Assembly: GCF_032191835.1 (NCBI RefSeq)
Contig: NC_083224.1
Location: 62,434,001 to 62,498,000 of the forward strand
Direction of reading: 5' to 3'
From: Heteronotia binoei
Taxonomy: Eukaryota
DNA: 64,000 bases
Shown piece by piece: positions 2,521 to 47,425 of the stretch (positions within the stretch are counted from its first letter, which is position 1; each line of letters begins with the position of its first letter). The position numbers and the translations under genes were made by a program. The notes beneath the pieces are model-generated. The model was not told the DNA's origin and made no database searches. It saw only the letters and a program-made list of their open reading frames with translations.

Positions 2521-3789
2521 CCCCTTTATTAAAGTATCTTCCTCAGCCATTTTCTGTTTTACTAAATTTAATGATAGTTGGTAGGGCACTAAAGAAGCAA
2601 AGGTGAAAGAACTGCAATCTGTAAGTATCTTTCTTGTCTGTGTGCCCCCTTCATTCTGAACTCAACATGTTTTCCAGGCATTACTTCCCTCCTGAAAGTC
2701 AAGTAGAAGGTATTGAATAGCAACACAGAGGCTGATATGGTAGCTTTGCTTGTTTCACATTTACACTCTTCTAAGCCGTGTTAGTATTTCTTTAATGAAC
2801 TGTGAAGCGAGTGTGATATACAATGCAGGCTTGTTCCTTATCCTTATAGCTGAGGTCTTTGCAGATGATAACTGTTTAGAACCTTCACTGTCACGCTGTT
2901 ATTTTCACAATAGACCATGTGCATTTATTAGCTGTGAAAGGAGCTCAGCACTTGCCTTTGGAGACTTGTTTGCAATCATCTGTTATCCATAATGGGCTAT
3001 GCAAACTCTGTTCTTGCAACTGACCTCCATGGTCAATTGTCTGCTACTGAAGTAGGCTGTGGGCCAAATGCTGTGAACAATTGCAATGCATTCTCTGCAA
3101 ATGAAGGCAAGGCTTAGCCCTGCCAGCCCATCTGTTCCTACTGCTGCCAGTCCATCTGCTGCCATAGTGTTCAGCCTGGTTGCCTTTGTGACTAGGCTGG
3201 TGAACTTCCCTGTCCTGTTCAGGGCTAGGCTAAACTGTTTACTCAACTTGCAGTACATTCCTAAGCAAAGTTACACCCTTCTTAAGCCCACTGACTTCAA
3301 TATGAAAGGGTATAACTGCTTAGATGATAGATGGCCTGGAGAAAGGGTTGTACCGCCTGTCATCTAACTGCTTTACTAGATATTTTTGTGGAGGGAGTGT
3401 TCTGAATTTTTCTACTGTTGAGGTTGATATATGAATCTATTATTTCAGCATTCCCCCACATAAACCCCCTCAGCAGCCCATGCAGAGAATGTTTAATGCT
3501 TTGCACATAGACAGGTTTTAGCCAGTGGTAGAACTGACCATGTTAACATCTGAGTCATCTACTGGTAGGTGCTAGTAATCATAGCTATGTATGGATGTTG
3601 TGACAGGAGGTCCTAGAGAGAATTCCTTTCTCTGAAGTGCTTTTTGGTGGTAGAAGACTGCACCCAACTTCTGTTTCATGTGTCCAGAGAGAGGACATAT
3701 ATTCTTAACCTGATAACTCTGAAATAAAGGGACATGCTTTTTTGTGTTCCACTGTTCTGTATCCACAGACACTGGTGTGCAAGCCAGTG

Positions 3790-4960
3790 CTATTAAGGTT
3801 GCTCAGAAAGAATCTGGAATAAGGGGTGAACAGCATAGCGGCCAAGTTTGCAGATGATGCCAAGTTATCCAGGATGATGAAAACCAAGGCAGATTGTGAA
3901 GAGCTCCAAGAGTGAACAATACATGTGGGAAATGATGTTCAATGCAGGTAAAGGCCAGATAACACAAAAAAAAAAGAGATCCTAACTTTAAATATATTCT
4001 GATGGGGTTTAAAGGGGCAGTGGCTGAGAGGGAAAAGGATCTTGGTGTTCCAGTGGACCATAATGAAAATTTCAACTCTCAGTATGGGGCTGAGGTGAAA
4101 AGAGCAAACTTCATGCTGGATATTATTAGGAAAGGGATTGCAAATAAAATGCCCAATGTAACCATGTCTGCTGTATAGTTGTAAGGTGAGGCCTCATTTG
4201 GAATACTGTGTACAGTTCTGGGACAAATGCAGAAGAGGGCAACTGGGTTGATTGAGCACTCTTCCTAGAAGGAAACATTCAAGGGTCTGGAGATTTGCAG
4301 TGTAAAAAGCCATGAGGGGGAGGACATGATTGAAGGTTGTAAAATTAAACATGGGAGTGGAGAAAGCAGACAGGGAGCTATTTTTGCATACTAGGACTTG
4401 AATGCACCTAATTTAGTTGACAATAGATTAAGGCCAGCTAGTAGAAGTTCTTATTCATTTAATTAGTTAGTACTTTTTAATTTAATCTATGTATCCCGCT
4501 TTTCTTCCCAGTGGGGACCAAAATCAACTTATGATATTGTTCTCTCCTCTGATTATTTCTCACAGCAATCCTATGAGGTAGGATAGCCTGAGAGAGAATG
4601 ATAGCACAAAATCACCCAAGACGTTTCTGTAGTGGAACAGAGATTCAAACCTGGTGCCCCAGGCCCTATCACTCGCTGAACTGACAGTATCTACTGGAAT
4701 TCACTGCCAGTAGATGCACTGATGGCCAGTAGCACAGGTGACTTTAAAAGGGCATTAGATCAATGGAGGGTAGGTCCATAAATGGCTACTAGCCAAGAAG
4801 ACTAAAGGGAAGCTGTGTGCAGAGGCAGTAAACATTTGAACACCAGTGCTAGGAGGTAACTTCAGGGGAAGGCCACAGTCCTCATGCTTTATCCGTTGGC
4901 TCTCTAGGACTAATGGTTGGACACTCTGAAACTGGGATGCCAGACCAGCAGTGTCATCCT
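3790..4960 (+). mobile_element. Old degraded CR1 RT/3' fragment, interrupted by a SINE
   Basis: GCCAAGTTTGCAGATGATGCCAAG (KFADD), GAGGCCTCATTTGGAATACTGTGTACAGTTCTGG and TGGAATTCACTGCCAG motifs shared with younger CR1 copies. Confidence 0.6.
4470..4690 (-). mobile_element. tRNA-derived SINE (Squam3-like), degraded
   Basis: Reverse-strand similarity to 14552-14792 and 58568-58832; B-box-like GGTTTGAATCTC on minus. Confidence 0.55.
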
Positions 4961-7804
4961 AAACAAGGTTACAACCCATTGACTTCAACAGATTTAGAAG
5001 GGAGTTGGTAACGACTTGGTGCTTCCATTCCATCTTTACCTTTAATTCTGTTGGACAGGAATTGGTTTGATCCACCAGGACACCTCCTAAATTAGGAACC
5101 ATATCTTCTTCCTCTTGTATAGCTCTGGAGGTTGAAGGAAAGTCAACATTTTCTGGACTTGAGTGTCATGTAGCCTGATTATTTAACTGAATCAAAGTGT
5201 GTCCTACTGAGTTCAACTGGACTTAGCCCTACTTTCGTTTCTAAAGTAGAAGAACAAATGGCTGAAGTCTTCACAGAGAACTGTGGTGCTGGTATGATCA
5301 AAAGGGGTGTCAGACACAAACAGTTCTGTGGACCAGACTCCTCTTCAGCTATTTTCTGGTTTTCTTGCTTCCTTAACTATTCAGTTGAAAAACTTACATC
5401 AGAGTGACACCTGAACTGTAGTGGTATTGCTCTGATTTGAATTTCTGGACAAACCAATTTTGCTGGCAACTGATTTCTTAAAAAAAAATAATCCTGGATT
5501 GCTCTCTGAATTGGTTGTCTTAATTTTTACCATTAAAGTCACCTTGTCTTACTGCTGTGTTATGCTGGAAATGTGGTGTCTCTCTTTTAAAAAATAAAAA
5601 ATCATGCTGTAAGATAAGCTATCTTTTGTTTATAGGGATGTGATATTCTGGAATGGTTGGACACAAGGGGTGGCTGGTAGCTTTATGGGGACATTACACT
5701 TCTTTGTTTCAAAGAATTCATTCGTTGTTTTTCAGCTTTGGAAAACTTTGCTCTAAGTGAACACTGAGATTCCACTTGAACTTGGATTTAATAATCACTT
5801 TAAGACTGAGGCTTGTGTTACTGAGTGGAACAGAGATTCAAACCTGGTGCCCCAGTCCCTATCACTCGCTGCACTGACTCAGTATCTACTGGAATTCACT
5901 GCCAGTAGATGCACTGATGGCCAGTAGCACAGGTGGCTTTAATTTTGAGAATGAAGGACTATTTTCTTCAGTACTCTTGTCATTGAAGGTGTAATAGAGA
6001 TGTATGCCAGCAGAGGGTGCTCCAGGCATTATATTTGACTGCAGTCTGCAGCTTTCCAGAGAAACCTTGTTTTGCCAGTATCTGAGCACTTTTCAAGGGT
6101 GTTTGTTTTAGCGGGGTACAAGTTGCTATACAGAGCTACTAAATTTCTCTACAAGTCTACAAAAAATTTAAGTTCTGGACCACTAACCATTTTGTTCTTC
6201 CAGTGTACCTGCCTCTTCTTACAGGTAGAAAAGCCAACAACCTGGAGGAAAGAAAAAGTCCTGATCTTTATCAGAAGTTATATGGGTGTTATTTATCAGA
6301 TGATAACCCTTTATCTCCATGCCATAAAAAGCTTCAATTACCCATTTCCACATGTTAAGCCTTTGTTATAGGGGCAAGACATTTGTTTTCCAGGTTCTTG
6401 GTACAATGGGGGTGAGTACATGTGTTTCTGTTTACAACTTCGTGGGAATGGAAGAACATTTTAGCAAAAAGTCAACAAATACTGAAACTTAGGGTGTGGT
6501 CAGATTGCTGTGTCAGTATTTTGGCTTTAAATGAACCATGTGAGTTTGGGGCAGTTTATGTCAATCAGACAGCGCCCCCTGAGCCAGAATCAGTGCTGTG
6601 GGCTCATGGTTGGCTACTGCAACCACGGACCCATGGCTGGGTTGGGTGTTCCTTCCCCCAACTTCCTGTTGTGCATGCACAGAAGCCAAGAAGTGCACAT
6701 GTGCTTCTAGCTGGTTCTAGTGGGGTGCTGAAGCACATGTTGTAGTGGGGTTGGAAAGGGGGGGGGGGACAATCACACCGCTCATGCATTTCCATGGCAC
6801 ACCGCAGTGATCAGACAGCTGGAAACCCATCATGGAAGTGCTTTGCTGCGGAATCTACTGGAATTTGCTGGTGGCTATTTAATCCACATTTCAGCATGAG
6901 ACACTGGGGCCAGATGTGTGCATGTGATCACACCCATTTAATCCGGAATGGAGGAGTGGCTATGTTGGGCCAAACTGCTAGTGTGATTGCACTCATAGAA
7001 AGACCTCAGTGTTATACAGTTAAAAAAAAAAAAAAAGCCAGACTTCTGCTGAGGAAAAAGTTTGGTTAATGCCTATTAATGAATGCCTTCCTTCTAATGC
7101 AATGCTACTTTCCTATGGTCTCAGAAGAACATGAGTTGATGCCTCATCCTAGTAAGCTGAGTGTGGAGAATGCATCACTGCCATAAACATGCAGAGAAGG
7201 GTATGCTTTCAGATGAAGATGTTACCAACACAAGATATTTTTTGTACAGTGTAGCATAAGGGAAGGCCTTCTTTTCAACAGTGGTGTTCAAATGGCAGTA
7301 AGACATCACAGTGTTCTGGAGAGTATCTGATTCTATCATGAGAATACATGATAAAACTGTGCATCTTGTTCAGCATACCAAAGGAAGCTTTGGGTCCAGG
7401 TTTTTCAAACTGTACCCCTCTGTGGTACATGGCAAGCTACTTTGGGAACCAGGTTCAAAACCATTTGCAGCACAAGGATCAGCTGTGTGTTTATGAGCCT
7501 CTGAAGCCTGACCTTTTAAACTGAGGTAGGATCTTTATGAAGGACTTAATCTTGGTGAAATTGATATTCACTGATGGTACATCTGGCCTGAACTGTTGAT
7601 GCATGTAAGCTGTCGATTTATGCAGCGATGACTGTTAAATGTATTAAGAATCTTACACCATATGTGAAATACGAGTTGGGCCTGCCTCATGTTTCACTTT
7701 GTTATGAGACCCTTAAATAATTGTGCAACATTAGGGTGCTTCTGGACTAGAAAGACCACCAAGATTTCCATGGTAGAAGCTGTGGAGAATCAAAGTTCCC
7801 TTCA

Positions 7805-7925
7805 AGATATCTGACAAAGAGAGCTTAGATGGTTGAAAGTTTATACCCTGGAAAACTTGCTGGTTTTTAAGGTGTTAATGGACTCAAGTCTTGCTCTTCT
7901 ACTGAGGACCAACATGGCTACCTAC
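7805..7925 (+). mobile_element. Penelope-like pseudo-LTR fragment
   Basis: CTGGTTTTTAAGGTG...GGACTC...GACCAACATGGCTACC terminus, similar to 27690-27825 in reverse. Confidence 0.5.
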
Positions 7926-7927
7926 CC

Positions 7928-8190
7928 AGGGCAAGCCCTAGCCCTTCTGGCGCCCTAGGCAGCACAGCTCCGTCCCAGCCCCAAGTCACTGGGCCTGCTG
8001 CCTACTCGCAAGTAGCCCTGTGCCTGCCACCTACTTTCGAGTAGCCCCATGCCTGCCACCTACTCATGAGTAGCCCAGGAGTTGGCGGCAGGTGCGGGGC
8101 TACTTGCAGGAAGAAGGCGGCAGTGCGGGGGGGGGAGAGGCAGGCAGACAAACCAGCGCCCCCTCTCAGACTCAGCCCGGCCCTACTGGC
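7928..8190. mobile_element. GC-rich hAT-like MITE with internal ~30-bp repeats
   Basis: Starts CAGGGCAAGCCCTAG...GGCGCCCTAGGC, ends CCGGCCCT; repeated GCCTGCCACCTACT...GAGTAGCCC units. Confidence 0.4.
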
Positions 8191-9663
8191 TTCAATGAGG
8201 CCAGCTTCTTATCCTTCTTTGAAGAACTCACTGGAGGAGGCTTCTCCGCCCTCCTTTCCGGAACTGGAAGGGAGGAGGAGTGAAGCTTCCTCCAGCCCCA
8301 TAACAGTTTTCATGACTGTGATGTGAAACCTTTCCTGCTAAGAGAGAAGTGTCTGCGGTTCTTTCTGCTTCAGGATCTGTTCTCTTCCTGGCCTTTTGTA
8401 ATCCCACACCCTATTCCCTCCCCACACAGCTCATGGTTCTAGAAGCCCTGACACACTACATGAATCAACTCTGTTTATTAAAGATTTTAGTGTGTTTCTC
8501 ATGAAAAGAGGCACGTGAATCTTTCTTCCATTGCTGCTGTAATGTACTTCAGCTGTTATGGCACTATGGGCTGTTTCTTTGTGCCGTTGCAGGATCAAAG
8601 AGAACTTGTTACAACCACTTTGGGGTGGAAAGTTGACATTGCATAAATATGAGTGTATTTCCATCAAAAGGCACCCTGATAAATTTGCTGGGAATTGGGG
8701 AAAAATCTCACTTATCAGTAGAAAAAGTTAAGTGAATTTGCTCCAAACGCAGGTAAGGTATGTTAAATGCAGTGAAAGAGCTTTCCCCAAACTGACTTGT
8801 ATTGCAGTTGGGAGCAGTGAGAATGACTGCAATCTACTATCAGTACAGAACTGTAATTATAACAGTATTTGGATGGTACTGTGGGCTTGAGGAGGATGGT
8901 TTGGAACGCAATGTATGGACCCAGCCTAATGACTAATCCTTTTTACTTTGCTAATAAGCAATGCTGGAAGTTTAATTATAGTATTGGCAAGTTAAAATAT
9001 TTAAAATTTGCATTGCAAGTGTGTCTCTCCTTTTTTTAAAAAAAGGTCATTTTTAATCTGATGGTTTTTCTGTTTGCTTTCTTGAAGGCCTTGTCTGAAA
9101 AAATATTTGCTTCCAAAGGAGTGTGTTGCTTGTATCTACTGGCTGCACATTTGCAAAGCATTACAACCATCCATCCATCTGGGATTCTCAGAACAAGTCT
9201 GCAGAGAAGCCATTGGGGATTTACTAGTTTACTCTTTTGCAATTGCCTGAAAATTAAAGATGGACAAAATAAGAGTTGGATTTAGGTCATTTATCATTTT
9301 AAAACCTTGTATTGTTTCTTTAATGCCAAATTAAAGTTAGTTGTTTCTATCTGATGTCAGTTTCATGATTCTGTTAGTCTTAATGGATCTCTCCTCAGGA
9401 CAGAGTGGAGGGTAAAGTACTGAGTGTCAGTACTCAGTACTGAGAGGAAGGAAGGGGCAAAATTACCCTCATACTTCTTGTGTCAGTAGAGCTGGGACTT
9501 GTGGTGGAAAAAACATTTTTGCTCTCTTTCTCCATGTGTCTGTTAGTTCACAGGCGTTCTCTGACCTTTGGAATCAACCCAGAAAGGAGCATGAGGAAGC
9601 GTGGCTAGTGTTGACACCTTCTGGTGACTGACAATCATGGGATCTATCCACATCTTTCAGGAT

Positions 9664-9812
9664 TAGGGTTGCTAGCTCAGGGGTGGGGATCCTGGGGTAG
9701 AACCTGGGTGGGGTTTGGGGATGGATGGGACCTCCACAGGGTATAATGCTATAGGATCTGTGCTTCAAAGCAGCCATTTTCTCCAGGTACCACCTAGAGC
9801 TTGGCAACCCTA
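9664..9812. mobile_element. MITE with TAGGGTTGC termini
   Basis: TIRs TAGGGTTGC / GCAACCCTA; related copies at ~14340-14553, ~49530-49700 and 57247-57615. Confidence 0.65.
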
Positions 9813-10954
9813 TTTGAGATGTTGGTCAGTGCCTTTTTAAGTTTCTGCTGTTTGAGCCACAATCATTCACTTAAGAGGAATTGGCCATTTTGGAGCAAAA
9901 TCTCTAATAGAATTGCAGTGCTTAAGACTTGAGCGCACACTTTTCCCGCTACTGTTTAGCCAATCACATGCCTTAGGCATGTTTATGTTACTAAATCAGA
10001 GCATCTCAGAATCCCAATTTATTTCCTACAGCAAGGTCTGACTGATGAAAGTAGACCTCTAAAATTCTAGAAAAGAAAAAAAAAACCCTTTCATAATCTG
10101 GTGTATGGTTTACTCTGAGTGCTGGTGAGAGATTTTGGGCCTGGATCAATGCAGGCCTGAGAGGTTTGTTAACACTACATTGATTCTCTTTACAGTGAGT
10201 TGTTTGGCTCAAAGGGGTTTTTTACCTGCCTGCCAGTCCTGCTTTATTATCCATGAAATGGTTTTCTTTTCATCCATTATTGAAGGGTCCCAGTTTATAA
10301 AGCATAGAGTTTTAAAGGATCACAAATGTGTGTTTACTTTTTTGATACAACAAGAAGAATGTTGCCTTTTTGAAAACAGAGATGGGGTGGAGGATTGCTG
10401 AGATACAATCAGAAGTCACAGTTCCTGTGGGGACTGCTTTGAGTCTCTAGAGGGGTGAGCAAGATGCTGCATTCCTTGGAATGTTGGCCATTTGGTCTCT
10501 CTTCAGAGGTATGTGCATGCATGTCATCAAGTTGCAATGGATTAATGGCAGTTCAGCAAGAGGCTTTAAAAAAAAAATGAAATATAAAATTTATTTAGAA
10601 TCTGTCACAAACATTTCACTCCACAAAAAAAAGGGAAAGAGAGAAAAGTCAAAATATTCCAGGAAGTGGAGTACATTTTAACAGTAAAATTCAGAAAAAC
10701 AAAAGCTTTTACAGTCAAGGACAATATCAACAATGAATCAAGATAGAGAGGGTCAACATTACAACTTAAGTTTGATCAATGTTCCCCCTACAGAATATTT
10801 TGGAATTTACTCCATATCGCAAGAGAAAGACCTCTACTACTCCCTCTTTTTCTGATGTGTCAACAAGAAAGAGAAAAGAACTCCAGGTTCAGATACAGAC
10901 TAAGGGAGGAAAGGAAGGGGCCAGAACAAATTCATACACATATTTCATAAAAGC

Positions 10955-16780: not shown

Positions 16781-17333
16781 TATTAATCATCTTAATAAAA
16801 ACGGCAAGGGCACCCAAACTGCAGCCTGGCCAGGGCTAGGGGTCTCAATAGACCACTCCCCTGCCATTTGCGGGTGAGAGACCCAGCACCCAGCCAGAGC
16901 TGAGTGACATAGCTCCCTCCAGGCCGGCCCGGCAGGGAGGCACGCCCCAGAGGGCCCAAGCACCAGACGCATGTCTCAATGGAAGGCGCCCTCTAGTCGA
17001 GCCTCCGGGACAGTCTGCGTTCTCCCCACATCGGGTCATCATAACCCGGGTGATCATGCCAGACCCCTAAAACCCCAAAAGGGGGATGCTTCATGGTCCT
17101 CTCCTAGCCGCATAGTGCCCTACCCCAGAAAACCTGCCAAACTAAAGTGACCAACCTATTTAACAGCACCTCCCAATAGCCAAATCCACAATCCACTGTT
17201 TCGCTATGTAGGGTAGGCGAAAAAACACCCCAGCAACTGCCAATCAGCTGGGGAGCAAAAAATTCCTACCCGGCCGCACAACAAGTAACGACCAGCAAAC
17301 GCCTACATAACAAACAGGGTGGGTGGGAGGGCC

Positions 17334-17504
17334 GATTGTCGATGGGGACTGAGGCAGGGAGCGGAGGTCTGGCCATTACAATGGCCTGGCCCCGCCCCCT
17401 CAAAAATGCGCCCTAATGGGCCGTCAGTCCTCCCTTCCCTCCAAGGGAGGCAAACAAGGCAAAAACAGCCTAGCAGTGTTGCTGCAGGCTGCAAGCCTCA
17501 GATT
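17334..17504 (-). repeat. Split direct repeat A2
   Basis: 171-nt ungapped match to 23803-23973, 15 mismatches by manual count. Confidence 0.92.
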
Positions 17505-17565
17505 GCCCCACCAAGTTGGAATGAAGAGTCGGACACAATGCATTGGTATAATAATTGGGCCACTT
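17501..17565 (-). repeat. Split direct repeat B1 (remnant, cut by CR1)
   Basis: Matches 16715-16780 up to the CR1 5' junction. Confidence 0.9.
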
Positions 17566-18745
17566 CCTCATCAAAGGCTCCTTAGAAAGCTCGAGAGTCA
17601 TGGAGTAAAAGGACAGGTCCTCTTGTGGATCAAAAACTGGCTAATTAATAGGAAGTAGAGAGTGAGTATAAATGGGCAGTCTTCTCAGTGGAGGGCAGTA
17701 AGCAGAGGGGTGCCGCAGGGCTCAGTACTGGGTCCCATGCTCTTTAACTTGTTCATTAATGATTTGGAGATAGGAGTGAGCAGTGAAGGGGCCAAGTTTG
17801 CGGATGACGCTAAATTGTTCAGGGTGGTGAGAAGCAGAGAGGATTGTGAGGCACTCCAAAGGGATCTGTTGAGGCTGGGTGAGAGGGCATCAACGTGGCA
17901 GATGAGGTTCAATATGGCCAAGTGCAAAGTAATGCACATTGGGGCCAAGAATCCCAGCTTCAAATACAAGTTGATGGGGTGTGAACTGGCAGAGAATGAC
18001 CAAGAGAGAGATCTTGGGGTCGTGGTAGATAACTCACTGAAAATATCAAGACAGTGTGCGACTGCAATAAAAAAGGCCAACACCATGCTGGGAATAATTA
18101 GGAAGGGAATTGAAAACAAATCAGTCAGTATACAGTATGCCCCTGTATAAATCAATGGTGTGGTCTCATTTGGAATACTGTGTGCAATTCTGGTCACTGC
18201 ACCTCAAAAATGATATTATAGCATTGGAAAAAGTACAGAAAAGGGCAACTAGAATGATTAAAGGTTTAGAACACTTTCCCTATGAAGAAAGGTTAAAACG
18301 CTTGGGACTCTTTAGCTTGGAGAAACGTCGACTGCGGGGTGACATGATAGAGGTTTACAAGATTATGCAGGGGATGGAGAAAGTAGAGAAAGAAGAACTT
18401 TTCTCTTTTTCTCACAATACAAGAACTCGTGGGCATTCGATGAAATTGCTGAGCAGTCAGGTTAAAACGGATAAAAGGAAGTACTTCTTCACGCAAAGGG
18501 TGATTAACATGTGGAATTCACTGCCACAGGAGGTGGTGGCAGCTACAAGCATAGCCAACTTCAAGAGGGGGTTAGATAAAAAATATGGAGCAGAAGTCCA
18601 TCAGTGGCTATTAGCCACAGTGTGTATATGTCTGTGTCTGTCTGTCTATCTATCTATGTAATTTTTTTGGCCACTGTGTGACACAGAGTGTTGGAATGGA
18701 TAGGCCATTGGCCTGATCCAACATGGCTTCTCTTATGTTCTTATG
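17564..18745 (+). mobile_element. 5'-truncated CR1 LINE inserted in Ngaro copy 1
   Basis: RT motifs PQGSVLGP and KFADD, C-terminal NMWNSLP; 3' UTR with microsatellite; TCTTATGTTCTTATG tail. Confidence 0.95.
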
Positions 18746-19235
18746 AGGTCAGGAAATTTTGTAGAAATATCTGGATGGGGCAGATAGTGGCCCAACCCCC
18801 CTTCCAATGCCTTCCTAATTTCCTTATTAGCTTTGTAGAGTGCTCTCTCAATAGCTGCAGGGTCCAATGCACTGCGCCAAACAAGGCGGGGCAGCATGGC
18901 TGACCAAATTATATTGGTCCCAGGCCATCGCTCCCTAATGTACTGAAGATCCTCACGGGCCTGCCAGACTAACGCTTTGCCTTTTACTAGTCCGAGATCA
19001 TTCCCTCCCAGGTGAATAATTAAAACCTGAGGAGGAAGGTCCATACTCCCTTGGAATAAAAAAGGCAGCAGGCCTGGCCACTGAAGGCCCCGGCGCCCCT
19101 GCCACTCGATACAAACATATTGGCTGAGTCCCAGCTGAGAGCTGACCGAAGTTTTCCACGCCTGATGAGCAGCCCAAAACGCATGGCTATGGCCGCAAAC
19201 GAGAACTCGGCTCCTCTGGCTAGGAACAACAGCAT
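18746..19235 (-). pseudogene. Ngaro SGNH hydrolase, copy 1 (block V lost at the CR1 junction)
   Basis: Frame open from the acceptor at 19235: (D)AVVPSQRSRVLVCGHSHAFW...QGRRGLQW...HLGGNDLG...; truncated at FPDL. Confidence 0.85.
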
Positions 19236-19380
19236 CTAAAAAAAGAGAAAACAGTCAAACAAGAACATAACCCGCAACATTTCAGCCAAACAATTAAAGA
19301 TAGGGACTGAGCAAAGGTCGAACATTGTACTTGTAAGCTGACTTGTAAGCTGAAGAGCACCAACGCCCCAAGCGTATAGG

Positions 19381-19905
19381 TTTGATTAAAGGTTTGGAAC
19401 ACTTTCCCAATGAAGAAAGGTTAAAATGCTTGGGGCTCTTTAGCTTGGAGAAACGCCGACTGCGGGGTGACATGATAGAGGTTTACAAGATTATGCATGG
19501 GATGGAGAAGGTAGAGAAGTACTTTTCTCCCTTTCTCGCAATACAAGAACTCGTGGGCATTCAATGAAATTGCTGAGCAGACAGGTTAGAATGGATAAAA
19601 GAAAGTACTTCTTCACGCAAAGGGTGATTAACATGTGGAATTCACTGCCACAGGAGGTGGTGGCGGCTACAAGCATAGCCAACTTCAAGAGGGGGCTAGA
19701 TAAAAATATGGAGCAGAGGTCCATCANNNNNNNNNNNNNNNNNNNNNNNNNNNNNNNNNNNNNNNNNNNNNNNNNNNNNNNNNNNNNNNNNNNNNNNNNN
19801 NNNNNNNNNNNNNNNNNNNNNNNNNNNNNNNNNNNNNNNNNNNNNNNNNNNNNNNNNNNNNNAGAGTATTGGACTGGATGGGCCACTGGCTTCTCTTATG
19901 TTCTT
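19381..19905 (+). mobile_element. Short 5'-truncated CR1 inside the YR gene
   Basis: CR1 ORF2 C-terminus and TTATGTTCTTA tail; AAGC flanks both sides (19370-19373, 19906-19909). Confidence 0.9.
19727..19862. other. Assembly gap (136 N)
   Basis: N run at the position where this CR1 subfamily carries a 3' UTR microsatellite. Confidence 1.
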
Positions 19906-20728
19906 AAGCACTGAATTGAGGAGGAAGGATATCCCAAGGCAGCAGCTGTCGAAGCTGCCCCAATTCTAAAAGAGTGGTTCCCAAACCTCACCCCTGAAAA
20001 ACCCCAGCTCACCTAAAGCCCGCGCCATCACAGCCCAAAACTGATGCTTTGTCAGCGGGCTACCATTATTGTGACAGAACAAAAACCCTTCCTTAGACCC
20101 CCAAGCAGCCAAATAAGTCGTCAAAGCATAAACTGGGCACAGCTCCAGCTCGGAGCAGGTGCCAAGCTCAAGCATGGTACCTGTTTGACCCTGGTCCGTC
20201 TTAGAACCATGTACAGTAATGACCACTTTGTCCTCAGATAACCTCAGGTCCCGTAGCAACAAAGCATTGTCAGAAACATTGTTTCTGGACCAAGCCACCA
20301 GCTTGCTAACTCTAAGAACCCCCAAAAAGGCTACCAAGGATGCAGCATGAAACAAAGAAGCCTCAAAATGTAAAGCACACATCATGCCCGAAATCCCCTT
20401 TAGACCCCTAAGAATCTGAGGGGATATAGGTTTTCGTGCATCCTGCCTAGGTCCAGCCTCTCTGGCCCACCCCTCCAGCATTTTTCGGAGACGAAAATCA
20501 GCTGTTTTCTCCCTATAACCCAGCGCCTTACTGGCAAAAGCCAATGTAGACAATCGCCCCTAATGGATCACACGGCCAGTCCCTTACCTCATAAATAAAC
20601 ACTTTAGTGGAGCAACTGCTCCACCTGGAGGGGCCAAACACTGCGATACCCTACCTCAGCCCTAAAGTCCTCAAACTGCCGCACAGCATGTTCGTAAGAC
20701 TTCCTGGTGCTGGGCGCAATGGCTAGGC

Positions 20729-22046
20729 CTATCGCTCTACAGGCCTCAGCTCTCCAATCAGGCATAGCTCCTGGGGCATTGACATTGCCTCTTGATCGGC
20801 ATCTGGGGCCAGCTGACGAAACCTCTCCATCTGTTTATGAGAGAGAGCATCAGGCACCCCGTTATTCACCCGAGGAACATGCTTGGCTAAAAACAATATG
20901 TTAACCCGCAGACAACGCAGCGTGAAGGCCTGCACCAACCTCATAACCCACTGGGATTTGGATGAAAGGGAATTAATGACATGGACTACCGCCATATTAT
21001 CGCACCAAAAATGAACTGTGCGATTGGCCATATCCTTCCCCCACAGCCAAACTGCAACTAGAATGGGAAAAAACTTGCAGAATGTAAGATCTCAGTTCAT
21101 TCCCGCCTGCCTCCAGGAGTCTGGCCAACCGTCCGCATACCAATGTCTGCAGAAGTAGACTCCAAAACCCAGAGATCCAGCAGCATCAGACATGACCTGG
21201 AGCTCAGCTTCAAGCCTCATGTCTTCTCTCCAAAAGGAGATCCCATTAAAGGACTCAAAAAATTCTTGCCAAACCCCCAAATCTTCCCTCATGCTGCTGG
21301 TAACCCGCGTCCTATGCTGCGGCAAGCGTAGACCTGCCATTGCGTCACAAAGCCTATGGAGAAAGGCTTGCCCCGGAGCAACCACAGTGTCATACCACGG
21401 CCACAGCCTGATCAAAGCTGGTATACCTAACAGAGCATAAATGCTCAGGAATCCCATCATTAATAGACTTCCCTTTGGGGAAGGAAAGATGGTGAATCAA
21501 GTGAAATTCCCCAGGCGCCTTTTTAGGCACCATGCCCAATGGGGAAACCCTAAGGTTATGCACAGGGGGATGGAAAAATGGGCCCAACACCCTGCCTTTA
21601 GCCAACTCCTTGGCAATCTTATCTTTAACTACCTGCTCTAAACCCTTAACAGAACTAAGGTTCCCAGACAAAAACGGAACCCGGGGACCCTGAAAAGGGA
21701 TCCTAAAACCGAACTTGAAACCATTTAACAGGTAAATGTGGTCAGCTCTCCATGGATACCTGGACAGCCAGCGCTCAAGAGGACCCACCTTTATCGGAGT
21801 GGGCCCCTTTTCCAGCCTGATAACTTCCCCCTCCTCCTTCTGGCTTCTTTTGATTCTTACGCACCCGGTCTTTGGGGCAGTTATTGAAGGAGTGAGGCCC
21901 GCCACACATGGGGCATTCGTGCTTAAACTGACAAGCCTTTCTACTACACACTCCCTGAGAACCAAACTCCCAACAAAGCAGGGGGGGTTGAACCCCCTGC
22001 CCCGCAGAACTGCGGGAAGAGGCTGCCAAAGCCGAGGAGGTAGCAC
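20729..22046 (-). pseudogene. RT/RNase H of Ngaro copy 1, RT catalytic core deleted
   Basis: GFKFGFRIP, VSPLGMVPKK, LIHHLSFP, YTSFDQAV joined directly to VVAPG.AFL; RNase H motifs SDAAGSLGFG, CDNMAVV, N.VPDALS. No YxDD motif. Confidence 0.88.
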
Positions 22047-23171
22047 TCAACCTGGCCACCAAATGACCGCTATCAGAGCGGTCACCTAAATTTGGCTGGG
22101 CAGGAGACATGACCTGCAGCCACAGCTGCTGGTGCATACAGTCCCACTGAAGGGAAGGGTACAATGCGGCCCTCATCCTGAATTCCTCGTCATATTGAAT
22201 CCAGGCAGGTCCACTAAACATAGTGTATCCTTTATAAATTATATCCAAATACTGGATGAGTGCAGCCGCGCTCCAAGGCTGGACACGTGCAATCACTCCA
22301 GCATAGATAAAAAACCCTGGTAGCCAATTGGCCCATGTCCGATCCACCTTGCGCTTCTTCAATTTTTCCTTCTCTTTGTTGTTCAGATCCACCTTATCCT
22401 TCTTTTCCAACTCCCGAAACAGAAGGGAGAAGATATTGAAATACTCCCCCTTTAAGATCTTATCTTTTGTTGCAGGCAACAAATGATCCCCTAAAGGCAA
22501 AGCAACCTCCCCAAAAGGTAAGGCGGTAAAAGGAAGCATCCCATAAGGAGAAGGGGTGCCCCAATTCTTGATGAAAAAGCCTGCACTACCTTGCTGTCCC
22601 ACACCCAGCCAAACTACACTGGGGCCACATTGCCCAGTAGGCCAAGCCGAATTTGATAATGGCCCCACCCCTGCAGGGGAAGCAAACCCTGTACTCACAG
22701 CAGGGATGCCCTGCCCCGCAGGTGAAGCTGGACCCCAAGGCCCCCAAGGCCAAGCCAGCCCTGCATACGCTTGTGAGATGTCCCCAGCCTTACCGACAGA
22801 TCCAGCTGGCACCACCAGCTGGCTCCCGCAGCTCCAGATCATGACACCAATCCCGTGTCTGGATGGCCAAGGCCCATGGCACTGCCAGTGAAGAATGCAC
22901 CAGATCTGCCCTCAAGAATAGAAAACCTGGTTAGTACATTCGCTTGGAGCTCCCTTTTTGAAGCCCTTTCCCTTCCTGCCCCTTCAGAAGGAGAAATTCC
23001 CGACGCCTGTTCCAGCACCCGCAGCCTTTGCATAATGTTCGCATTAACAGCCTCATCACCCTCCTCGTCAGAAGACGACAGCTGGGGTGGAGGCCTCTTA
23101 GCAGGGGCCTTAGGGGCCTTTGGCGCCAGCTGTTTCCCTTTTGGCTTCCCCGACCCCTTTCCTCCAGGCAT
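21775..23171 (-). pseudogene. ORF1 (gag-like) of Ngaro copy 1, one frame break near 22840
   Basis: Basic N-terminus MPGGKGSGKPKGK; C-terminal C-x8-C-x4-C-x3-H then C-x2-C-x3-H-x4-C, also present in copy 2. Confidence 0.8.
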
Positions 23172-23479
23172 CTCTCAAAATGGCTTCCGCACAATGCCAA
23201 CTAAAATGGCCACCCTCCCTTAACTAAGAAGAAGGGGACCCAATATGGCCAACCTACAAAACATCAGGGAAGAAAATTGGCGACGCAGCTAAAACAGTAA
23301 TCCTCCCCCTGCCTGCCTGAAGTAAAACTCCCAACCAAACCACTTCCCTGTCAAAGGAGGGAGGAGGCTGGGCACCCCAACAATAAGAAGAGAAAAAAGA
23401 CTGCCCTGCGTGATCCTGGCTCCAACCGACGACCCTCAAAATTTGTCCTCACTGCCCCAAAATGACAAGAGAGTGCACA

Positions 23480-23705
23480 GCTCACAGGAAAGGCCCTTTG
23501 CCCGTCAAGACGGCCACCACCGCCAAAGATGCAGCCTCCAAGCCTGGGGAGCATCTAGCTCCCAAGAGACTTTCCTCGCCTGCAAAGACGGCCGCTGCCG
23601 CCACAGACCCAGCCTCTGAGCCTGGGGAGCGCCCAGCTCCCAAGAGACTTTCCTTGCCTGCAAAGGCGGTCACCGCAGCCACAGGCGCAGCCTCTGAGCT
23701 TCAGG
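23480..23705. repeat. 78-bp tandem repeat (~3 units) in the Ngaro 5' leader
   Basis: CCCAAGAGACTTTCC at 23561 and 23639; flanking partial units. Confidence 0.85.
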
Positions 23706-23802
23706 CTCCTGAATCCCTGCAAGACCGCGCTAACCCCGACGAAGAGGCAAGGCCTCCTCCCCGTCAGCACTCCAAGCCTACAAAGATCAACCCTTCAAAG
23801 CT

Positions 23803-23973
23803 GATTGTCGACGGGGACTGAGGCAGGGAGTGGAGGTCTGGCCGTTACAATGGCCTGGCTCCGCCCCCTCAAAAACGCGCCGGAACGGTCTGTCAGTCCT
23901 CCCTTCCCTCCCAGGTAGGCAAACAAGGCAAAAGCAGCCTAGCAGCATTGCTGCAGGCTGCAAGCCTCAGATT
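23803..23973 (-). repeat. Split direct repeat A1 (5' terminus)
   Basis: Matches 17334-17504; GC box GGGGGCGGAGCC on minus at ~23857-23868. Confidence 0.92.
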
Positions 23974-35997: not shown

Positions 35998-36593
35998 TGA
36001 ACATAAGAACATAAGAGAAGCCATGTTGGATCAGGCCAATGGCCCATCCAGTCCAGCACTCTGTGTCACACAGTGACCAAAAAACCCAAGTGCCATCAAG
36101 AGATCCACCAGTGGGGCTAGAAGCCCTTCCACTGTGCCCCCCCAAGCACAAGAATACAGAGCATCACTGCCCCAGACAGAGAGTTCCAACAATACGCTGT
36201 GGCTAATAGCCACTGATGGGCCTCTGCTCCATATGCTTATCTAATCCCCTCTTGAAGCTGCCACCACCTCCTGTGGCAGTGAATTCCATGTGTTAATCAC
36301 CCTTTTGGTGAAGAAGGACTTTCTTTTATCCATTCTAACCCAACTGCTCAGCAATTTCATTGAATGTCCATGAGTTCTCATATTGTGAGAGAAGTACTTC
36401 TTTCTCTACCTTCTCTATCCCATGCATAATCTTGTAAACCTCTATCATGTCACCCCTCAGTCAACGTTTCTCCAAGCTAAAGAGCCCCAAGCGTTTTAAC
36501 CTTTCTTCATAGGGAAAGTGTTCCAACCCTTGAATCATTCTCGTTGTCCTTTTCTGCACTTTTTCCAATGCTATAATATCCTCTTTGAGGTGC

Positions 36594-36624
<31 letters not shown>

Positions 36625-37170
36625 AAGGCCGCACCATCGATGTATACAGGGGCATTGTAATACTGGCTGATTTGTTTTCAATTCCCTTCCTAATAATTCC
36701 CAGCATGGCATTGGCCTTTTTTATTGTAATCACACACTGTTCCGACATTTTCAGTGAGTTATCTACCACAACCCCAAGATCCCTCTTGGTCAGTCTCTGC
36801 CAGCTCACACCCCATCAACTTGTATTTATAGTTAGGATTTTGGCTCCAATGTGCATTACTTTGGACTTGGCCATGTTGAACCTCATTTGCCACGTTGACA
36901 CCCACTTGCCCAGCCTCGACAGATCCCTTTGGAGTGCCTCACAATCCTCTCTGATTCTAACCACTCCAAACAATTTATTGTCATCCGCAAGCTTAAACTC
37001 TCCACTGCTTATTTCCAACTCTAAATCATTAATGAACAAGTTAAAAAGCATTGGACCCAGTACTGAGCCCTGTGGCATCGCACTGCTTACCATCCTCCAC
37101 TGAGAAAATTGCCCATTTAGACTCACTCTCTGTTTCCTATTAATTAGCCAGTTTTTGATCCACAAGAGGA
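35998..37170 (-). mobile_element. 5'-truncated CR1 LINE (long 3' UTR subfamily)
   Basis: [20 protein letters not shown]; (ATAAGAAC)n tail. Confidence 0.93.
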
Positions 37171-44982: not shown

Positions 44983-45578
44983 TTAGCGCCCCACCGGACG
45001 GCCCAGAGCCGACCGCAATCCCTGCCAAATTTCCTCTAAAAAGGCCCGGTTGCCCAACTCTGACATATGGACCCCATCCAGCCGATACAAGTCCGCGTCG
45101 GCTACACGTATGGCTGGATATGGAAGAAAGAGCCCTAAGCCACTTTCCATAGCCTTCTGCAGGGCCCTGTTGACCTTGCACCTAGCGCGCTCAATGCCAC
45201 CAGGGGAAAGGGCAAACCTCCAAACCCTGTGCGGCAGAATAGCAGACCATACCAGGACCACACCTGGCCATCTACGCTTGATTTCTCGAAGGTCAGCCAA
45301 TGCTTGCAGCGAGAGGGCTCTGCCCTGCATCAATCCCAAGTCATTACCACCCAGGTGGATGACCAAGATGTGGGGAGGAGTTGCCGTCCTTTCTCTAAAC
45401 AGCAATGGCATGATCCCTGGCCAACGTAGGCCCCGGCGACCCAGCCACTCCACTATTGCCCACTCACTGAGGCCCAGTTGGGTGCCCGCTGGAGACCGCC
45501 TGGCATGATGGGCCGCCCAGAACACCATGCTGTGCCCGCAGATGAGGATACGACACCTCTCACTACAAGCCCCAGCAC
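44983..45578 (-). CDS. SGNH/GDSL-like hydrolase exon, open with all four catalytic blocks
   Basis: ILICGHS (I), GRRGLRW (II), HLGGNDLG (III), DGVH (V); 197 sense codons from the acceptor to the stop. Confidence 0.85.
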
Positions 45579-45689
45579 CTAAAGAAACAGAAAATTGTCA
45601 AACAAGTAATAGCCAACGGGCAATAAAACAGTCGCATGTCCATGCCAACCCTCCTAGGTGACCAATAGGGTGCCAAGCTACATAGGTCC

Positions 45690-46157
45690 CCACCGGCTTC
45701 TGCTTCCCAGATGCCAGGCCCTAACCTCCTGGCGCTCCTTGGCTATGTTAGCCCAAACCGCGTGCCCAAGGCCCGTCACTAAATGGAGATTAGCCGCAAA
45801 ACATGGGGCCGTAGGACCCTGGTAAGGGGTACAGAGCCCCTCAGCAAATCCCTTCCACAAATACTCCCCATCAGCCTTACGCGGATACTTGCTCAGTAAA
45901 CTACTGAGCGCCCTCAGATGAATGAGGCTGGGCCCCTTTTCCAGGGGGCTGCTGGTTGTCATCCCCCCCGGGGCGCTTGACCCCGGCCCTTGGCTTCGAT
46001 TGACTACAAGCCGAGAGGGCGTGAGACCCGCCACACAGTGGGCACTCATGCTTAAACTTGCAGGGTTCTCTAGAGCAGGCGCCCTTCGATGCAAGCTCCC
46101 AGCACGACAGCTGGGGCTGAACCTGCTGGCCCACTGTAACGCGGGCCCCTGAAACAA
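45690..46157 (-). pseudogene. RT N-terminal remnant of Ngaro copy 2
   Basis: LEKGPSLI..L..LLSKYP..ADGEYLWKGF.EG..TPYQGP...ANIAKE aligns with the copy-1 RT start, then stops. Confidence 0.7.
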
Positions 46158-47425
46158 GCTGCTGCTTGAGAACTAAATGTCCGCTATCGGACCTGTCACC
46201 TGGATTTGGCTTTGCCGGGGACATCAACTGCAGCCAAAGCTGCTGGTTAATCTGATCCCATGGCAATTCCGGGTTAACGGCGGCCCTCATACGAAAGGCC
46301 TCGTCGTACTGCAGCCAAGCTGCGCCGGCGAAAGCCCGGTACACGATATCACAATACTGAAAAAGCGCAGCAGCATGAGCCGGCTGCGCCCTTGCGATAA
46401 CTCCTGCATAGATCAGGAAACCTGGCAGCCAATTCGCCCAGGTCCTGTCAACCTTCCTACGTTTCAACTTCTCCTTTTCTTTATCGTCGAGTTCCTCCTT
46501 GTCCTTTTTCTCGACCTCTCTGAAAAGGAGGCTGAAAACATCTACTTTTCACCACGTAGTATCTTATCCTGCGTTGTCGCCATTAGATGGTCCCCCAACG
46601 GCAACGCAGTGTCGCCGTATGGGAGCATATGAAACGGGATGCTGGCATAGGGGTTAGGTGGGTAAAACCACATACCCCTCTGAAAAAACAGCCACGCCCC
46701 CTGCAACTGTGCGTATTGTTGCCCACCCTAGGATAAAACGCCAGGAGGGGGCTGCGCTGCAACGGCCGTCTGTGGCACTGGCGAAGTGGACGCCTGGCCG
46801 GAGGTCAGCAAACCTGGGCTACCTACAACGGACCCTTGGGGGGCTGCGCCCTGAACACCCCAGGCCCAAGATGACCCCGCACCCAACTGATTGGCAGACG
46901 GTCCGCTCTGCCCAAAACCCCACGGCGCTCCCGCTGCTGTGGTGGGGGGGGCGGTACTTGGGTAGGACCCCAAGGCCATGCCTGCTGCTGCTGACGGGGG
47001 GGGGGCTTACCAACATTCCCAGAGAATGGCACCGCGACCGCTGGGGGCTGCTGCACCCTCTCTGCTGCCGCGCGACCGACAGCTGGCTGTTCTGACAAAC
47101 CCTCACCCGGGTCTTCCTCTTGGTCCGGCTCTTGTTGGGGCTCACGCCCAGGTGCTCTGCCCTGCAAAGCAGACAAACGTACCAGCACCTCCTTTTCAAA
47201 GGTCAAACGTGCGGAGCACTCTGTAGCACGGCGACGCCCTTCCCATATGGGAGCGCCCATGGCCACTCTCTGCTGCTCCAGAGCCTCTAACTGGCCCATA
47301 ATGGGCTGTCTTACTTGGGCTTCTTGCCCTGGATCCTCAATGGGACCGGATTGCTGCCCCCGCCTCCTGGGGGGTCGGGCGGGCTGCTTGCCCTTAGATT
47401 TGCCCTGCCCTTTCTTTGGCGCCAT
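45901..47425 (-). pseudogene. ORF1 (gag-like) of Ngaro copy 2, frameshifted
   Basis: MAPKKGQGKSKGKQ start; KRRKVDRTWANWLPGF.IYAGVIAR and CCCH/zinc-knuckle shared with copy 1. Confidence 0.8.

What the first reader, a model, noticed from the sequence alone, without database searches (positions are those of the whole stretch)
19235..21789. Predicted intron joining Ngaro ORF1 (Gag/zinc finger) to the SGNH hydrolase and skipping RT, RNase H and YR
Seen (minus strand): (1) a donor GAT AAA G|GTGGGT at 21789/21788, phase 1, four codons before the ORF1 stop. (2) An acceptor GTTTGAC-TGTTTTCTCTTTTTTT-AG|AT at 19236/19235, also phase 1. (3) Joining them gives one open frame, ...AHSDK-D-AVVPSQRSRVLVCGHS...HLGGNDLG. 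(4) Unspliced, the hydrolase frame is closed by TGA at 19257-19255 and its first ATG (19044) is 48 codons after the catalytic Ser, so normal initiation cannot make the enzyme. Established: some vertebrate Ngaro elements encode an SGNH hydrolase, and some CR1/L2 LINE ORF1 proteins carry an SGNH esterase fused to their RNA-binding region. Inference: this lineage makes Gag alone from unspliced RNA and a Gag-esterase fusion from spliced RNA, reaching a LINE-ORF1p-like architecture by splicing. I know of no report of this but cannot check the literature. Caveats: the GT is also a Val codon in the overlapping RT frame, and this copy is decayed.
Basis: partly seen in the sequence, partly recalled or inferred. 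Interest (0 to 1): 0.9.

Follow-up and report, generated by a model that had tools for sequence, protein, structure and literature searches.

The report
Ngaro esterase splice uses another donor

Summary
Every sequence statement in the finding is correct: GT at 21788, AG at 19236, phase 1 at both, an in-frame join, TGA at 19257-19255 and first ATG at 19044. The acceptor is well supported. Seven Ngaro elements only 50-80% alike all have a pyrimidine tract plus AG, in phase 1, 35 nt (once 41 nt) before the (V/I)CGHS codons. NCBI gene models in at least 9 squamate species start an exon there.

The proposed donor is not supported. It is one of 24 phase-1 GTs in that frame. It is kept only in the closest family, where it is a Val codon of the RT frame, and is absent from four other families. 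No protein in the databases joins the Gag core or zinc finger to the esterase. At least 30 proteins join only the first ~90-140 Gag residues to it, using an invariant G|GTA donor. That donor is at 22794|22793 in this copy and 47011|47010 in a second copy in the window.

Spliced that way, the second copy gives an uninterrupted 336-aa ORF. I saw no RNA reads. The same scan flagged the Gag-N/esterase idea on other pieces of this genome. I found no paper describing it. In passing: amniote TSG101 has an alternative last exon encoding a related esterase.

The parts
17331..23973 (-). Copy A: decayed Ngaro (DIRS-order) element, bounded by direct repeats 23973-23800 and 17504-17331
   Evidence: Self-BLAST gives 90.8% identity over 174 nt in the same orientation. 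Gag, RT/RH, YR and hydrolase are colinear with the Heteronotia element L003 at 59-81% aa identity.
22839..23171 (-). True Gag N-terminal ORF of copy A (MPGGKGSGKPKGK...SSSDEE...two helices). It ends in a stop at 22841-22839, and a frameshift follows before the donor.
   Evidence: ORF list. 54% identity to the N-terminus of P0024. (23171-22794+1) mod 3 = 0, not the 1 required.
22788..22796 (-). Conserved, annotated-type 5' splice site TCG|GTAAGG. Last exon base 22794, GT at 22793-22792, phase 1 (V-G|K).
   Evidence: G|GTA is invariant in 6 elements (alignment A3). The same site is the exon 1 end of NCBI models in L003, L004, L005 and L007.
21775..22842 (-). Intronic under the conserved donor.
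   Evidence: Homologues are all Gag-only proteins.
21783..21791 (-). Phase 1, 8 of 9 consensus positions, and also the Val codon of the overlapping RT frame (..PIKVGPLERW..).
   Evidence: Conserved only in the same-family L003; absent in B, L002, L001 and L007.
20732..21827 (-). RT/RNase H remnants. About 170 aa of the RT core are missing near 21385/21360, and there are several stops.
   Evidence: tblastn with L003 ORFs and ORF list.
19905..20553 (-). Tyrosine recombinase, main part, with a frameshift near 20000
   Evidence: tblastn with the L003 YR gives 68-82% identity. The L004 YR ORF hits Phage_integrase and Phage_int_SAM_1 just below cut-off.
19383..19910 (+). CR1-like LINE 3' fragment inserted antisense into the YR C-terminus. 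It contains the assembly gap 19727-19862.
   Evidence: 84-93% identity to four other copies in the window. The + strand ORF has CR1 RT C-terminal motifs.
19294..19382 (-). YR C-terminal tail (..RLGRW.SSAYK.Y..) and YR stop
   Evidence: ORF 19294-19473 and the sequence read.
19236..19258 (-). 3' splice site: branch-point-like TTGAC at -23 (which contains the in-frame TGA 19257-19255), a tract of 89% pyrimidines, and AG at 19237-19236
   Evidence: It is conserved in position and phase in 7 elements and is the exon 2 start of the NCBI models.
18746..19235 (-). SGNH hydrolase exon of copy A. Blocks I (CGHS), II and III (HLGGND) are present. It is cut before block V by a CR1 insertion.
   Evidence: Pfam Lipase_GDSL_2 E=1.7e-5, 25.8 bits, below cut-off. 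Other copies continue past 18745 with the D-G-V-H block (loose ends).
17662..18745 (+). Second CR1-like LINE fragment (RT C-terminal ORFs on the + strand) that truncates the hydrolase
47011..47425 (-). Copy B (a second Ngaro family, about 65% identical): Gag-N exon from ATG 47425 to donor TTG|GTAAGC (47011|47010), phase 1
45579..47010 (-). Copy B intron: Gag core and zinc finger (broken by a stop and a frameshift), about 240 nt of the RT start, then an internal deletion that removed RT/RH/YR, then the acceptor tttgac-aattttctgtttcttt-AG
44983..45578 (-). Copy B SGNH hydrolase exon, complete with all four blocks. Joined to 47425-47011 it gives an uninterrupted 336-aa Met-to-stop ORF.
   Evidence: Pfam Lipase_GDSL_2 36.8 bits, above the 32.9 cut-off.

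Best explanation
The region is a decayed Ngaro tyrosine-recombinase retrotransposon. Its 3' esterase ORF is expressed, in intact relatives, from an env-like subgenomic spliced mRNA.

The intron starts at a conserved G|GTA(A/G)G donor at Gag codon ~127-139 (22794|22793 in this copy). Both sites are phase 1. Splicing removes the Gag core, zinc finger, RT, RNase H and YR. The product is a ~320-420-aa protein with this layout:
- a basic/acidic N-terminus,
- two Gag-N helices,
- a disordered linker,
- an SGNH esterase.

Unspliced RNA would give Gag (and Pol/YR). The spliced RNA would give the fusion.

Inferred, not shown: because the fusion shares the Gag N-terminal helices, it would co-assemble with Gag and bring a lipid- or acyl-esterase into the particle or RNP. 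This parallels the coiled-coil/linker/esterase ORF1p of CR1/L2 LINEs.

Copy A itself can make neither product. It has a stop and frameshift before the donor, and its hydrolase is cut at 18745.
For: Acceptor: in 7 elements of 50-80% identity, the AG lies 35 nt (41 nt in L003) before the (V/I)CGHS codons and is always phase 1. The preceding tract is 61-89% pyrimidine against 50% background. YTNAY occurs at -22/-23 in 4 of them, while the flanks are otherwise unalignable. Five of the 7 have no in-frame ATG upstream of the catalytic Ser.

Donor: G|GTA is invariant in 6 elements within a 47%-identity context, always phase 1.

Gene models: NCBI XP_ models fuse Gag-N to the esterase in Eublepharis, Heteronotia, Anolis sagrei, A. 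carolinensis, Elgaria, Hemicordylus, Pogona, Rhineura and Gekko kuhli. Mapped onto intact elements L003, L004, L005 and L007, exon 1 ends at that donor and exon 2 starts at that acceptor. In L003 and L004 I confirmed that the intron carries the Gag core, RT/RH and YR ORFs.

Other support:
- An intronless 1677-nt Logan contig (L008) encodes a contiguous 394-aa Gag-N/esterase ORF.
- Copy B in this window gives an uninterrupted 336-aa ORF when joined at these sites, although its Gag core is broken.
- Host chimeras (DUSP12, VGLL4, TSG101) enter the esterase at the same place.
- The catalytic S, G, N and D..H blocks are invariant or nearly so across 21 fusions.
- The AF2 model shows helices 33-52 and 74-93, a disordered 94-141, and an SGNH fold at pLDDT >90 with PAF-AH-like top matches.
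Against: I saw no RNA reads. No RNA run was listed for this sequence. The only runs available were four small DNA skims, which show no joint at either candidate intron.

I could not inspect the evidence behind the NCBI models, and some could have been propagated by protein similarity. The library type of the run behind L008 is unknown, so it could be a DNA copy.

L001 has no GGTAAG at the expected place. Two elements (L003, L007) have in-frame ATGs upstream of the Ser, so unspliced initiation is possible there. A newt model (P0117) joins part of the Gag core to the esterase, so donor position varies among lineages.
Confidence: 0.75

Rival explanations
1. One reading: the intron runs from 21788 to 19236, and the spliced RNA encodes full-length Gag (with zinc finger) fused to the esterase.
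For: The GT has the best consensus match of the 24 phase-1 GTs (8 of 9), and the join is in frame. The GT is also present in the same-family element L003.
Against: The GT is absent at the homologous place in B, L002, L001 and L007, and where present it is the RT-frame Val codon. The NCBI model on L003 uses the upstream donor instead. No protein with Gag core plus SGNH was found in three large searches, against at least 30 Gag-N fusions.
Confidence: 0.05
2. Both donors are used in this one family: the upstream donor is the major one, and the ORF1-end GT is a minor alternative giving some full Gag-esterase.
For: Good consensus, correct phase, and presence in both family members seen. Donor position differs in a newt model, so donor choice is evolutionarily flexible.
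Against: There is no annotated isoform or assembled contig of that form. Conservation of the GT is explained by RT coding.
Confidence: 0.1
3. There is no functional splicing. The esterase is translated from unspliced or separately initiated RNA (upstream ATG, non-AUG start, reinitiation after YR), and the gene models are annotation artefacts on repeats.
For: L003 and L007 have in-frame ATGs upstream of CGHS. Published descriptions treat the hydrolase as a separate, overlapping ORF4 (PMC9210276). I saw no RNA data.
Against: The ATGs are not conserved: 5 of 7 elements have none, and A and B have a TGA 6 codons before the AG. A pyrimidine tract, AG, fixed distance and fixed phase are conserved where nothing else is. 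Models agree across 9 species and many loci. An intronless contig exists (L008), and host genes splice into the same site.
Confidence: 0.1

Closest known systems
Ngaro hydrolase ORF (Goodwin & Poulter 2004; Xenopus DIRS-53_XT/54_XT, PMC9210276; reviewed in PMC7192593)
   Same: The same element type and the same extra SGNH ORF after YR.
   Different: The literature describes it as a fourth, overlapping ORF 'with no proven function'. The papers I could search make no mention of an intron, an acceptor or a Gag fusion.
Subgenomic env mRNA of retroviruses and errantiviruses such as gypsy (my own knowledge, not checked here)
   Same: A donor near the 5' end (leader or early gag), an acceptor just before the 3' accessory ORF, and an intron carrying gag-pol. 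Full-length RNA serves as genome and gag-pol mRNA.
   Different: Here the donor lies inside the Gag coding sequence, so the product is a Gag-N fusion. It is an enzyme without a signal peptide or transmembrane segment, and the element is a tyrosine-recombinase retrotransposon.
Esterase-type ORF1p of CR1/L2/RTEX LINEs (ZfL2-1; PMC3905857)
   Same: N-terminal helical multimerisation region, a poorly conserved basic linker, then an SGNH esterase of about 170-190 aa. Total size is about 300-340 aa and there is no structural RNA-binding domain.
   Different: The LINE protein is encoded as one unspliced ORF1. Here the same layout is assembled by splicing, and the helices are shared with Gag. I did not test homology between the two esterases. 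The solved ZfL2-1 esterase was not found by sequence and was not among the 50 Foldseek matches listed.
GDSL esterase ORF3 of bdelloid Vesta LTR retrotransposons and Athena elements (PMC5408684)
   Same: An SGNH/GDSL esterase captured as an extra 3' ORF of a retroelement, in the env position.
   Different: An independent capture in another class of element. No fusion to Gag and no splice were described in the passages I read.
Retroviral Gag-Pol principle (my own knowledge)
   Same: An enzyme shares the Gag N-terminus so that it is taken into Gag assemblies.
   Different: There it is achieved by frameshift or readthrough at the Gag end. Here it is by splicing after only ~130 residues. Co-assembly here is inference only.

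Membership tests
Ngaro (DIRS-order YR retrotransposon) | Gag-like ORF1, RT/RNase H and a tyrosine recombinase in that order | tested here: met
   Copy A is colinear with L003 Gag, RT and YR. RVT_1 scores 39.9 bits; Phage_integrase (25.4 bits) and SAM-like domain hits are just below cut-off in the related L004. RVT_1 is also found in L002.
Ngaro (DIRS-order YR retrotransposon) | Split direct repeats (A1 ... B1 A2 B2) | tested here: inconclusive
   One pair of direct repeats, 23973-23800 and 17504-17331, at 90.8% identity. I did not resolve the B repeats, and the 3' end is disturbed by a CR1 insertion.
Ngaro (DIRS-order YR retrotransposon) | No methyltransferase domain; some have a hydrolase ORF after YR | tested here: met
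   The SGNH ORF follows YR. No methyltransferase hit in the Pfam scans of the L004 ORFs.
SGNH/GDSL hydrolase | Blocks I (GxS), II (G), III (GxND) and V (DxxH) with the catalytic residues | tested here: met
   Met for copy B and the 21 fusion proteins: G-H-S, G, H-L-G-x-N-D and D-G-x-H are invariant or nearly so. Pfam gives 36.8 bits for B. The fold matches PAF-AH-like SGNH structures. Copy A lacks block V because it is truncated at 18745, and scores below the Pfam cut-off.
Spliceosomal GT-AG intron | GT donor, AG acceptor, pyrimidine tract, branch-point-like motif, compatible phase | tested here: met
Spliceosomal GT-AG intron | Spliced RNA actually observed | not testable with these tools
   No RNA run was listed. 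The only evidence is indirect: NCBI models in 9 species and an intronless contig, L008, of unknown library type.
Esterase-type LINE ORF1p (ZfL2-1 class) | First ORF of a non-LTR retrotransposon of the CR1/L2/RTEX clades | tested here: not met
   The host element is a YR retrotransposon and the protein is assembled by splicing. It works like this class but is not a member.
Esterase-type LINE ORF1p (ZfL2-1 class) | Coiled coil, then linker, then esterase, with no RRM or zinc knuckle | tested here: met
   The AF2 model and alignment show two N-terminal helices, a disordered linker and an SGNH domain. The zinc finger is intronic. I did not test self-association of the helices.

The most novel reading that the evidence does not exclude
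Hydrolase-bearing Ngaro elements of squamates, and perhaps of vertebrates generally, use an env-like subgenomic splice. It is the first described for a tyrosine-recombinase retrotransposon. The product is a Gag-N/SGNH-esterase fusion that rebuilds the coiled-coil/linker/esterase layout of LINE ORF1p and rides into Gag assemblies through shared N-terminal helices. The esterase exon, with its own 3' splice site, was later captured by host genes. The most striking case is a conserved alternative last exon of amniote TSG101, the ESCRT-I protein that retroviral Gag late domains recruit.
Probability: 0.45. Interest if true: 0.75.

Novelty: new variant of a known kind. Interest (0 to 1): 0.6.

Why it matters
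How DIRS/Ngaro elements express their extra enzyme has not been addressed in the papers I could find. A conserved subgenomic splice would explain an ORF that lacks a start codon. It would show that YR retrotransposons regulate expression in the way retroviruses do.

It would also give a second, independent route to the 'multimerisation helix + esterase' protein that CR1/L2 LINEs encode. That strengthens the idea that lipid or membrane chemistry matters for retrotransposition.

For annotation, it means hundreds of 'uncharacterized LOC' genes in lizard genomes are Ngaro esterase mRNAs. The TSG101 and DUSP12 chimeras show that this ready-made exon is easily captured by host genes.

Tried and rejected
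- RNA evidence: the look-up of sequencing runs listed no RNA run, either for 19863-22842 (kind rna) or for 21700-22500 (kind any).
- DNA skims: the four small DNA runs that were listed show no joint at 22794>19235 or 21789>19235 at 85% likeness. This is uninformative given short contigs.
- The joints 21803>22488 and 18970>21448 in those runs occur in only one or two runs, each from a single contig, with unknown or inserted letters between. I did not pursue them.
- Full Gag-esterase fusions: searched with ORF1, with the hydrolase against 1.84 billion representatives, and with the Gag core region of P0003. None was found.
- Sequence search of the PDB with the hydrolase found nothing.
- P0187/L006 and P0224/L010 contigs are unspliced or do not span the junction. 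P0028 is not on record.
- The accession SRR6291285 appears in no paper, so the library type is unknown.
- Literature searches for Ngaro + splicing, intron or SGNH, and for TSG101 + SGNH or GDSL, gave no relevant report.
- I did not compute MaxEntScan scores because no tables were available. I used only a 9-position consensus count.
- I did not use complex prediction, because I make no claim of shown binding.
Full report
WHAT IS IN THE SEQUENCE

The minus strand between about 23973 and 17331 is a decayed Ngaro-type tyrosine-recombinase retrotransposon, which I call copy A. All four sequence statements of the finding hold:
- The donor-like AAG|GTGGGT has its last exon base at 21789.
- The acceptor-like ...gtttgactgttttctcttttttt-AG|AT has its exon start at 19235.
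- Both sites are phase 1, and the join is open (...AHSDK-D-AVVPSQRSRVLVCGHS...).
- The unspliced hydrolase frame is closed by TGA at 19257-19255, and its first ATG (19044) lies 48 codons after the catalytic Ser codon.

- The real Gag start is the ATG at 23171. That ORF (MPGGKGSGKPKGK...) runs into a stop at 22841-22839, and a frameshift follows. The '22842 ATG' is therefore an artefact of decay.
- About 170 residues of the RT core are missing.
- Two CR1-like LINE 3' fragments lie antisense in the element. One, at about 19383-19910, splits the YR C-terminus. The other runs from 18745 downward and cuts the hydrolase before its Asp/His block. Other genomic copies continue past 18745 with that block.

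THE ASSEMBLY GAP

The Ns at 19727-19862 sit inside the first CR1 fragment. The stretch 19726-19383 is 84-93% identical to four other copies of that repeat in the window, and the other flank carries the same repeat's end. The gap is therefore intronic under any reading. It cannot change the phase of either exon or the join.

IS THE IN-FRAME GT-AG PAIR MORE THAN CHANCE?

Not for the donor. The 356-codon frame holds 24 phase-1 GT dinucleotides, many of them Gly GGT codons.

The acceptor is another matter. I compared seven elements:
- copy A;
- copy B, a second and only ~65%-identical Ngaro family in this same window at about 47430-44980;
- two Logan contigs, L002 and L006;
- annotated loci in Heteronotia binoei (L003), Eublepharis macularius (L004) and Anolis carolinensis (L007).

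In six of them an AG lies exactly 35 nt before the (V/I)CGHS codons. In L003 it lies 41 nt before. It is always phase 1. It is preceded by a tract of 61-89% pyrimidines (background 50%), and in four elements by a YTNAY motif at -22/-23. The sequence further upstream does not align. In A and B the branch-point-like TTGAC itself contains the in-frame TGA. Five of the seven elements have no in-frame ATG between the last stop and the catalytic Ser. L003 and L007 do have such ATGs, inside the hydrophobic stretch encoded by the pyrimidine tract.

WHERE THE INTRON REALLY STARTS

I searched with the hydrolase of copy B against 1.84 billion representative proteins. I then compared the hits with Gag sequences. 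At least 30 proteins carry the first ~90-140 residues of Gag fused directly to the esterase. That Gag-N part has a basic MPPKKG..KGK start, an acidic SSSDEE patch and two helices.

These are NCBI XP_ models, often with several isoforms and many loci per genome. They come from Eublepharis, Heteronotia, Anolis sagrei, A. carolinensis, Elgaria, Hemicordylus, Pogona and Rhineura, plus a GenBank model from Gekko kuhli.

I mapped three of them onto their genomic loci. Exon 1 ends at G|GTAGGT in L003, G|GTAAGC in L004 and L005, and G|GTAAAG in L007, at Gag codon 127-138 and in phase 1. Exon 2 starts at the acceptor described above. In L003 and L004 I listed the ORFs inside the intron: the rest of Gag with its zinc finger, RT/RNase H and YR (RVT_1 and Phage_integrase hits in L004).

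The same GTN-G|GT-AAG (V-G-K) site is present in copy A (22794|22793), copy B (47011|47010) and L002 (1475|1476). G|GTA is invariant in an alignment whose mean identity is only 47%.

At the homologous place, the GT exists only in A and in the same-family L003 (AGG|GTGGGA), where it is the Val codon of ..PI(K/R)VGPLERW.. in the overlapping RT frame. B, L002, L001 and L007 have no GT there.

On L003, where both candidate donors are present, the NCBI model uses the upstream one.

No protein combining the Gag core or zinc finger with an SGNH domain turned up in any of these searches:
- ORF1 as query (13 hits, all Gag-only);
- the Gag core of P0003 as query (11 hits, Gag-only or Gag-C plus RT);
- the top 150 hydrolase representatives.

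INDEPENDENT SUPPORT FOR THE CORRECTED SPLICE

(a) Copy B in this window has lost RT/RH/YR by an internal deletion, and its Gag core is broken. Yet joining 47425-47011 to 45578-44983 gives one uninterrupted 336-aa Met-to-stop ORF. That is the same size as the annotated fusions, with all SGNH blocks present and a Pfam score of 36.8 bits.

(b) A 1677-nt Logan contig (L008, run SRR6291285) carries a contiguous 394-aa Gag-N/esterase ORF with no intron. That is what a spliced mRNA would look like. I could not learn whether that run is RNA.

(c) Host genes enter the esterase at the same point:
- DUSP12-esterase in Heteronotia and Gekko japonicus;
- VGLL4-esterase in a snake;
- an Anolis carolinensis LOC gene;
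- TSG101.

(d) Across 21 fusions, the catalytic Ser, Gly, Asn and Asp..His blocks are invariant or nearly so.

WHAT THE PRODUCT LOOKS LIKE

AlphaFold2 on the 21-sequence alignment (first sequence P0016) gives two N-terminal helices (33-52 and 74-93), a disordered linker (94-141), and a confident SGNH fold (146-333, pLDDT mostly above 90). The nearest solved folds are PAF-acetylhydrolase-like and bacterial GDSL enzymes.

This is the layout reported for the esterase class of LINE ORF1p: an N-terminal dimerising coiled coil, a poorly conserved linker, an esterase, and no structural RNA-binding domain. That esterase binds acidic phospholipids (PMC3905857).

MECHANISM, WITH STATUS OF EACH STEP

Shown here:
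- conserved donor, acceptor and phase;
- annotated models using them;
- an open spliced ORF in copy B;
- conserved catalytic residues and fold.

Inferred:
- Full-length RNA serves as template and as Gag/Pol/YR mRNA, while a fraction is spliced to give the fusion.
- The shared Gag-N helices take the esterase into Gag assemblies, on the Gag-Pol principle.
- The esterase acts on lipids or membranes, as proposed for LINE and bdelloid elements (PMC3905857, PMC5408684).

None of this can happen from copy A itself, which is broken before the donor and inside the esterase.

LIMITS

I saw no RNA reads. No RNA run was listed, and the four DNA skims laid on 18740-23200 show no joint at either intron, which says little. 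I could not inspect the evidence behind the NCBI models. Donor position is not universal: L001 lacks the GGTAAG, and a newt model (P0117) joins part of the Gag core to the esterase. All comparisons are between natural copies.

LITERATURE AND NOVELTY

The Ngaro hydrolase ORF is known but described as a separate overlapping ORF of unproven function (PMC9210276, PMC7192593). My searches for Ngaro with intron, spliced or SGNH found no description of an intron or a Gag fusion. The first-stage reader of this scan has flagged the same idea, with a Gag-N donor, on other pieces of this genome. Those notes are unchecked and are not independent evidence. I rate the corrected feature a new variant of a known kind: env-like subgenomic splicing, here in a YR retrotransposon and giving a Gag-N/enzyme fusion.

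Noticed in passing
L009:13437-14080 (Varanus komodoensis TSG101 locus); proteins P0199, P0201, P0202, P0216, P0203-P0214: 'TSG101 isoform X1/X2' models of 407-409 aa occur in manatee, tammar wallaby, turtles, lizards and snakes. They consist of the UEV domain plus Pro-rich region, followed by an SGNH esterase 39% identical over 144 aa to the Ngaro esterase (pairwise E 9e-34). In Varanus it is a single terminal exon inside the TSG101 gene. It is preceded by ...tgtttgttctcttaatag|cag| (a NAGNAG pair that explains X1 versus X2) and starts 11-12 codons before CGHS, about where the Ngaro acceptor lies. This may be an old capture of a Ngaro-type esterase exon by the ESCRT-I gene that retroviral Gag recruits. 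I found no paper with TSG101 + SGNH/GDSL.
   Followed up: partly
window 44983-47425 (minus strand): Copy B is a second Ngaro family, an internally deleted element lacking RT/RH/YR and with a broken Gag core. Its Gag-N exon and esterase exon are both intact and join into a 336-aa ORF. It is either a young non-autonomous derivative or a copy kept for the fusion protein.
   Followed up: partly
window 18740-19037: In four small DNA runs of 'organism A', contigs at least 85% like the middle and 3' part of the esterase exon have summed word depths of 3,600-10,000. That is comparable to the CR1 fragments and 20-500 times the rest of the Ngaro element. Some very abundant repeat in that genome shares this stretch. 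Unexplained.
   Followed up: no
proteins P0018, P0184, P0038, P0032/P0171: Host-gene/esterase chimeric models: DUSP12 in Heteronotia and Gekko japonicus, VGLL4 in Erythrolamprus, and a large LOC103281487 gene in Anolis carolinensis. All enter the esterase just upstream of CGHS, which suggests frequent exonisation of intronic Ngaro copies through their own acceptor.
   Followed up: no
window 17662-18745, 19383-19910, and about 36000-36790, 40400-41120, 60295-61100: At least five 5'-truncated copies of one CR1-like LINE 3' end (84-96% alike) lie in the 64-kb window. Two of them are inserted into the Ngaro copy.
   Followed up: no
protein P0117 and cluster (Lissotriton helveticus): Newt models join about 95 residues of the Gag core (LPLG.HL...F.LL.RE...), rather than Gag-N, to a related esterase. 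The fusion principle may be older than squamates, with a different donor.
   Followed up: no
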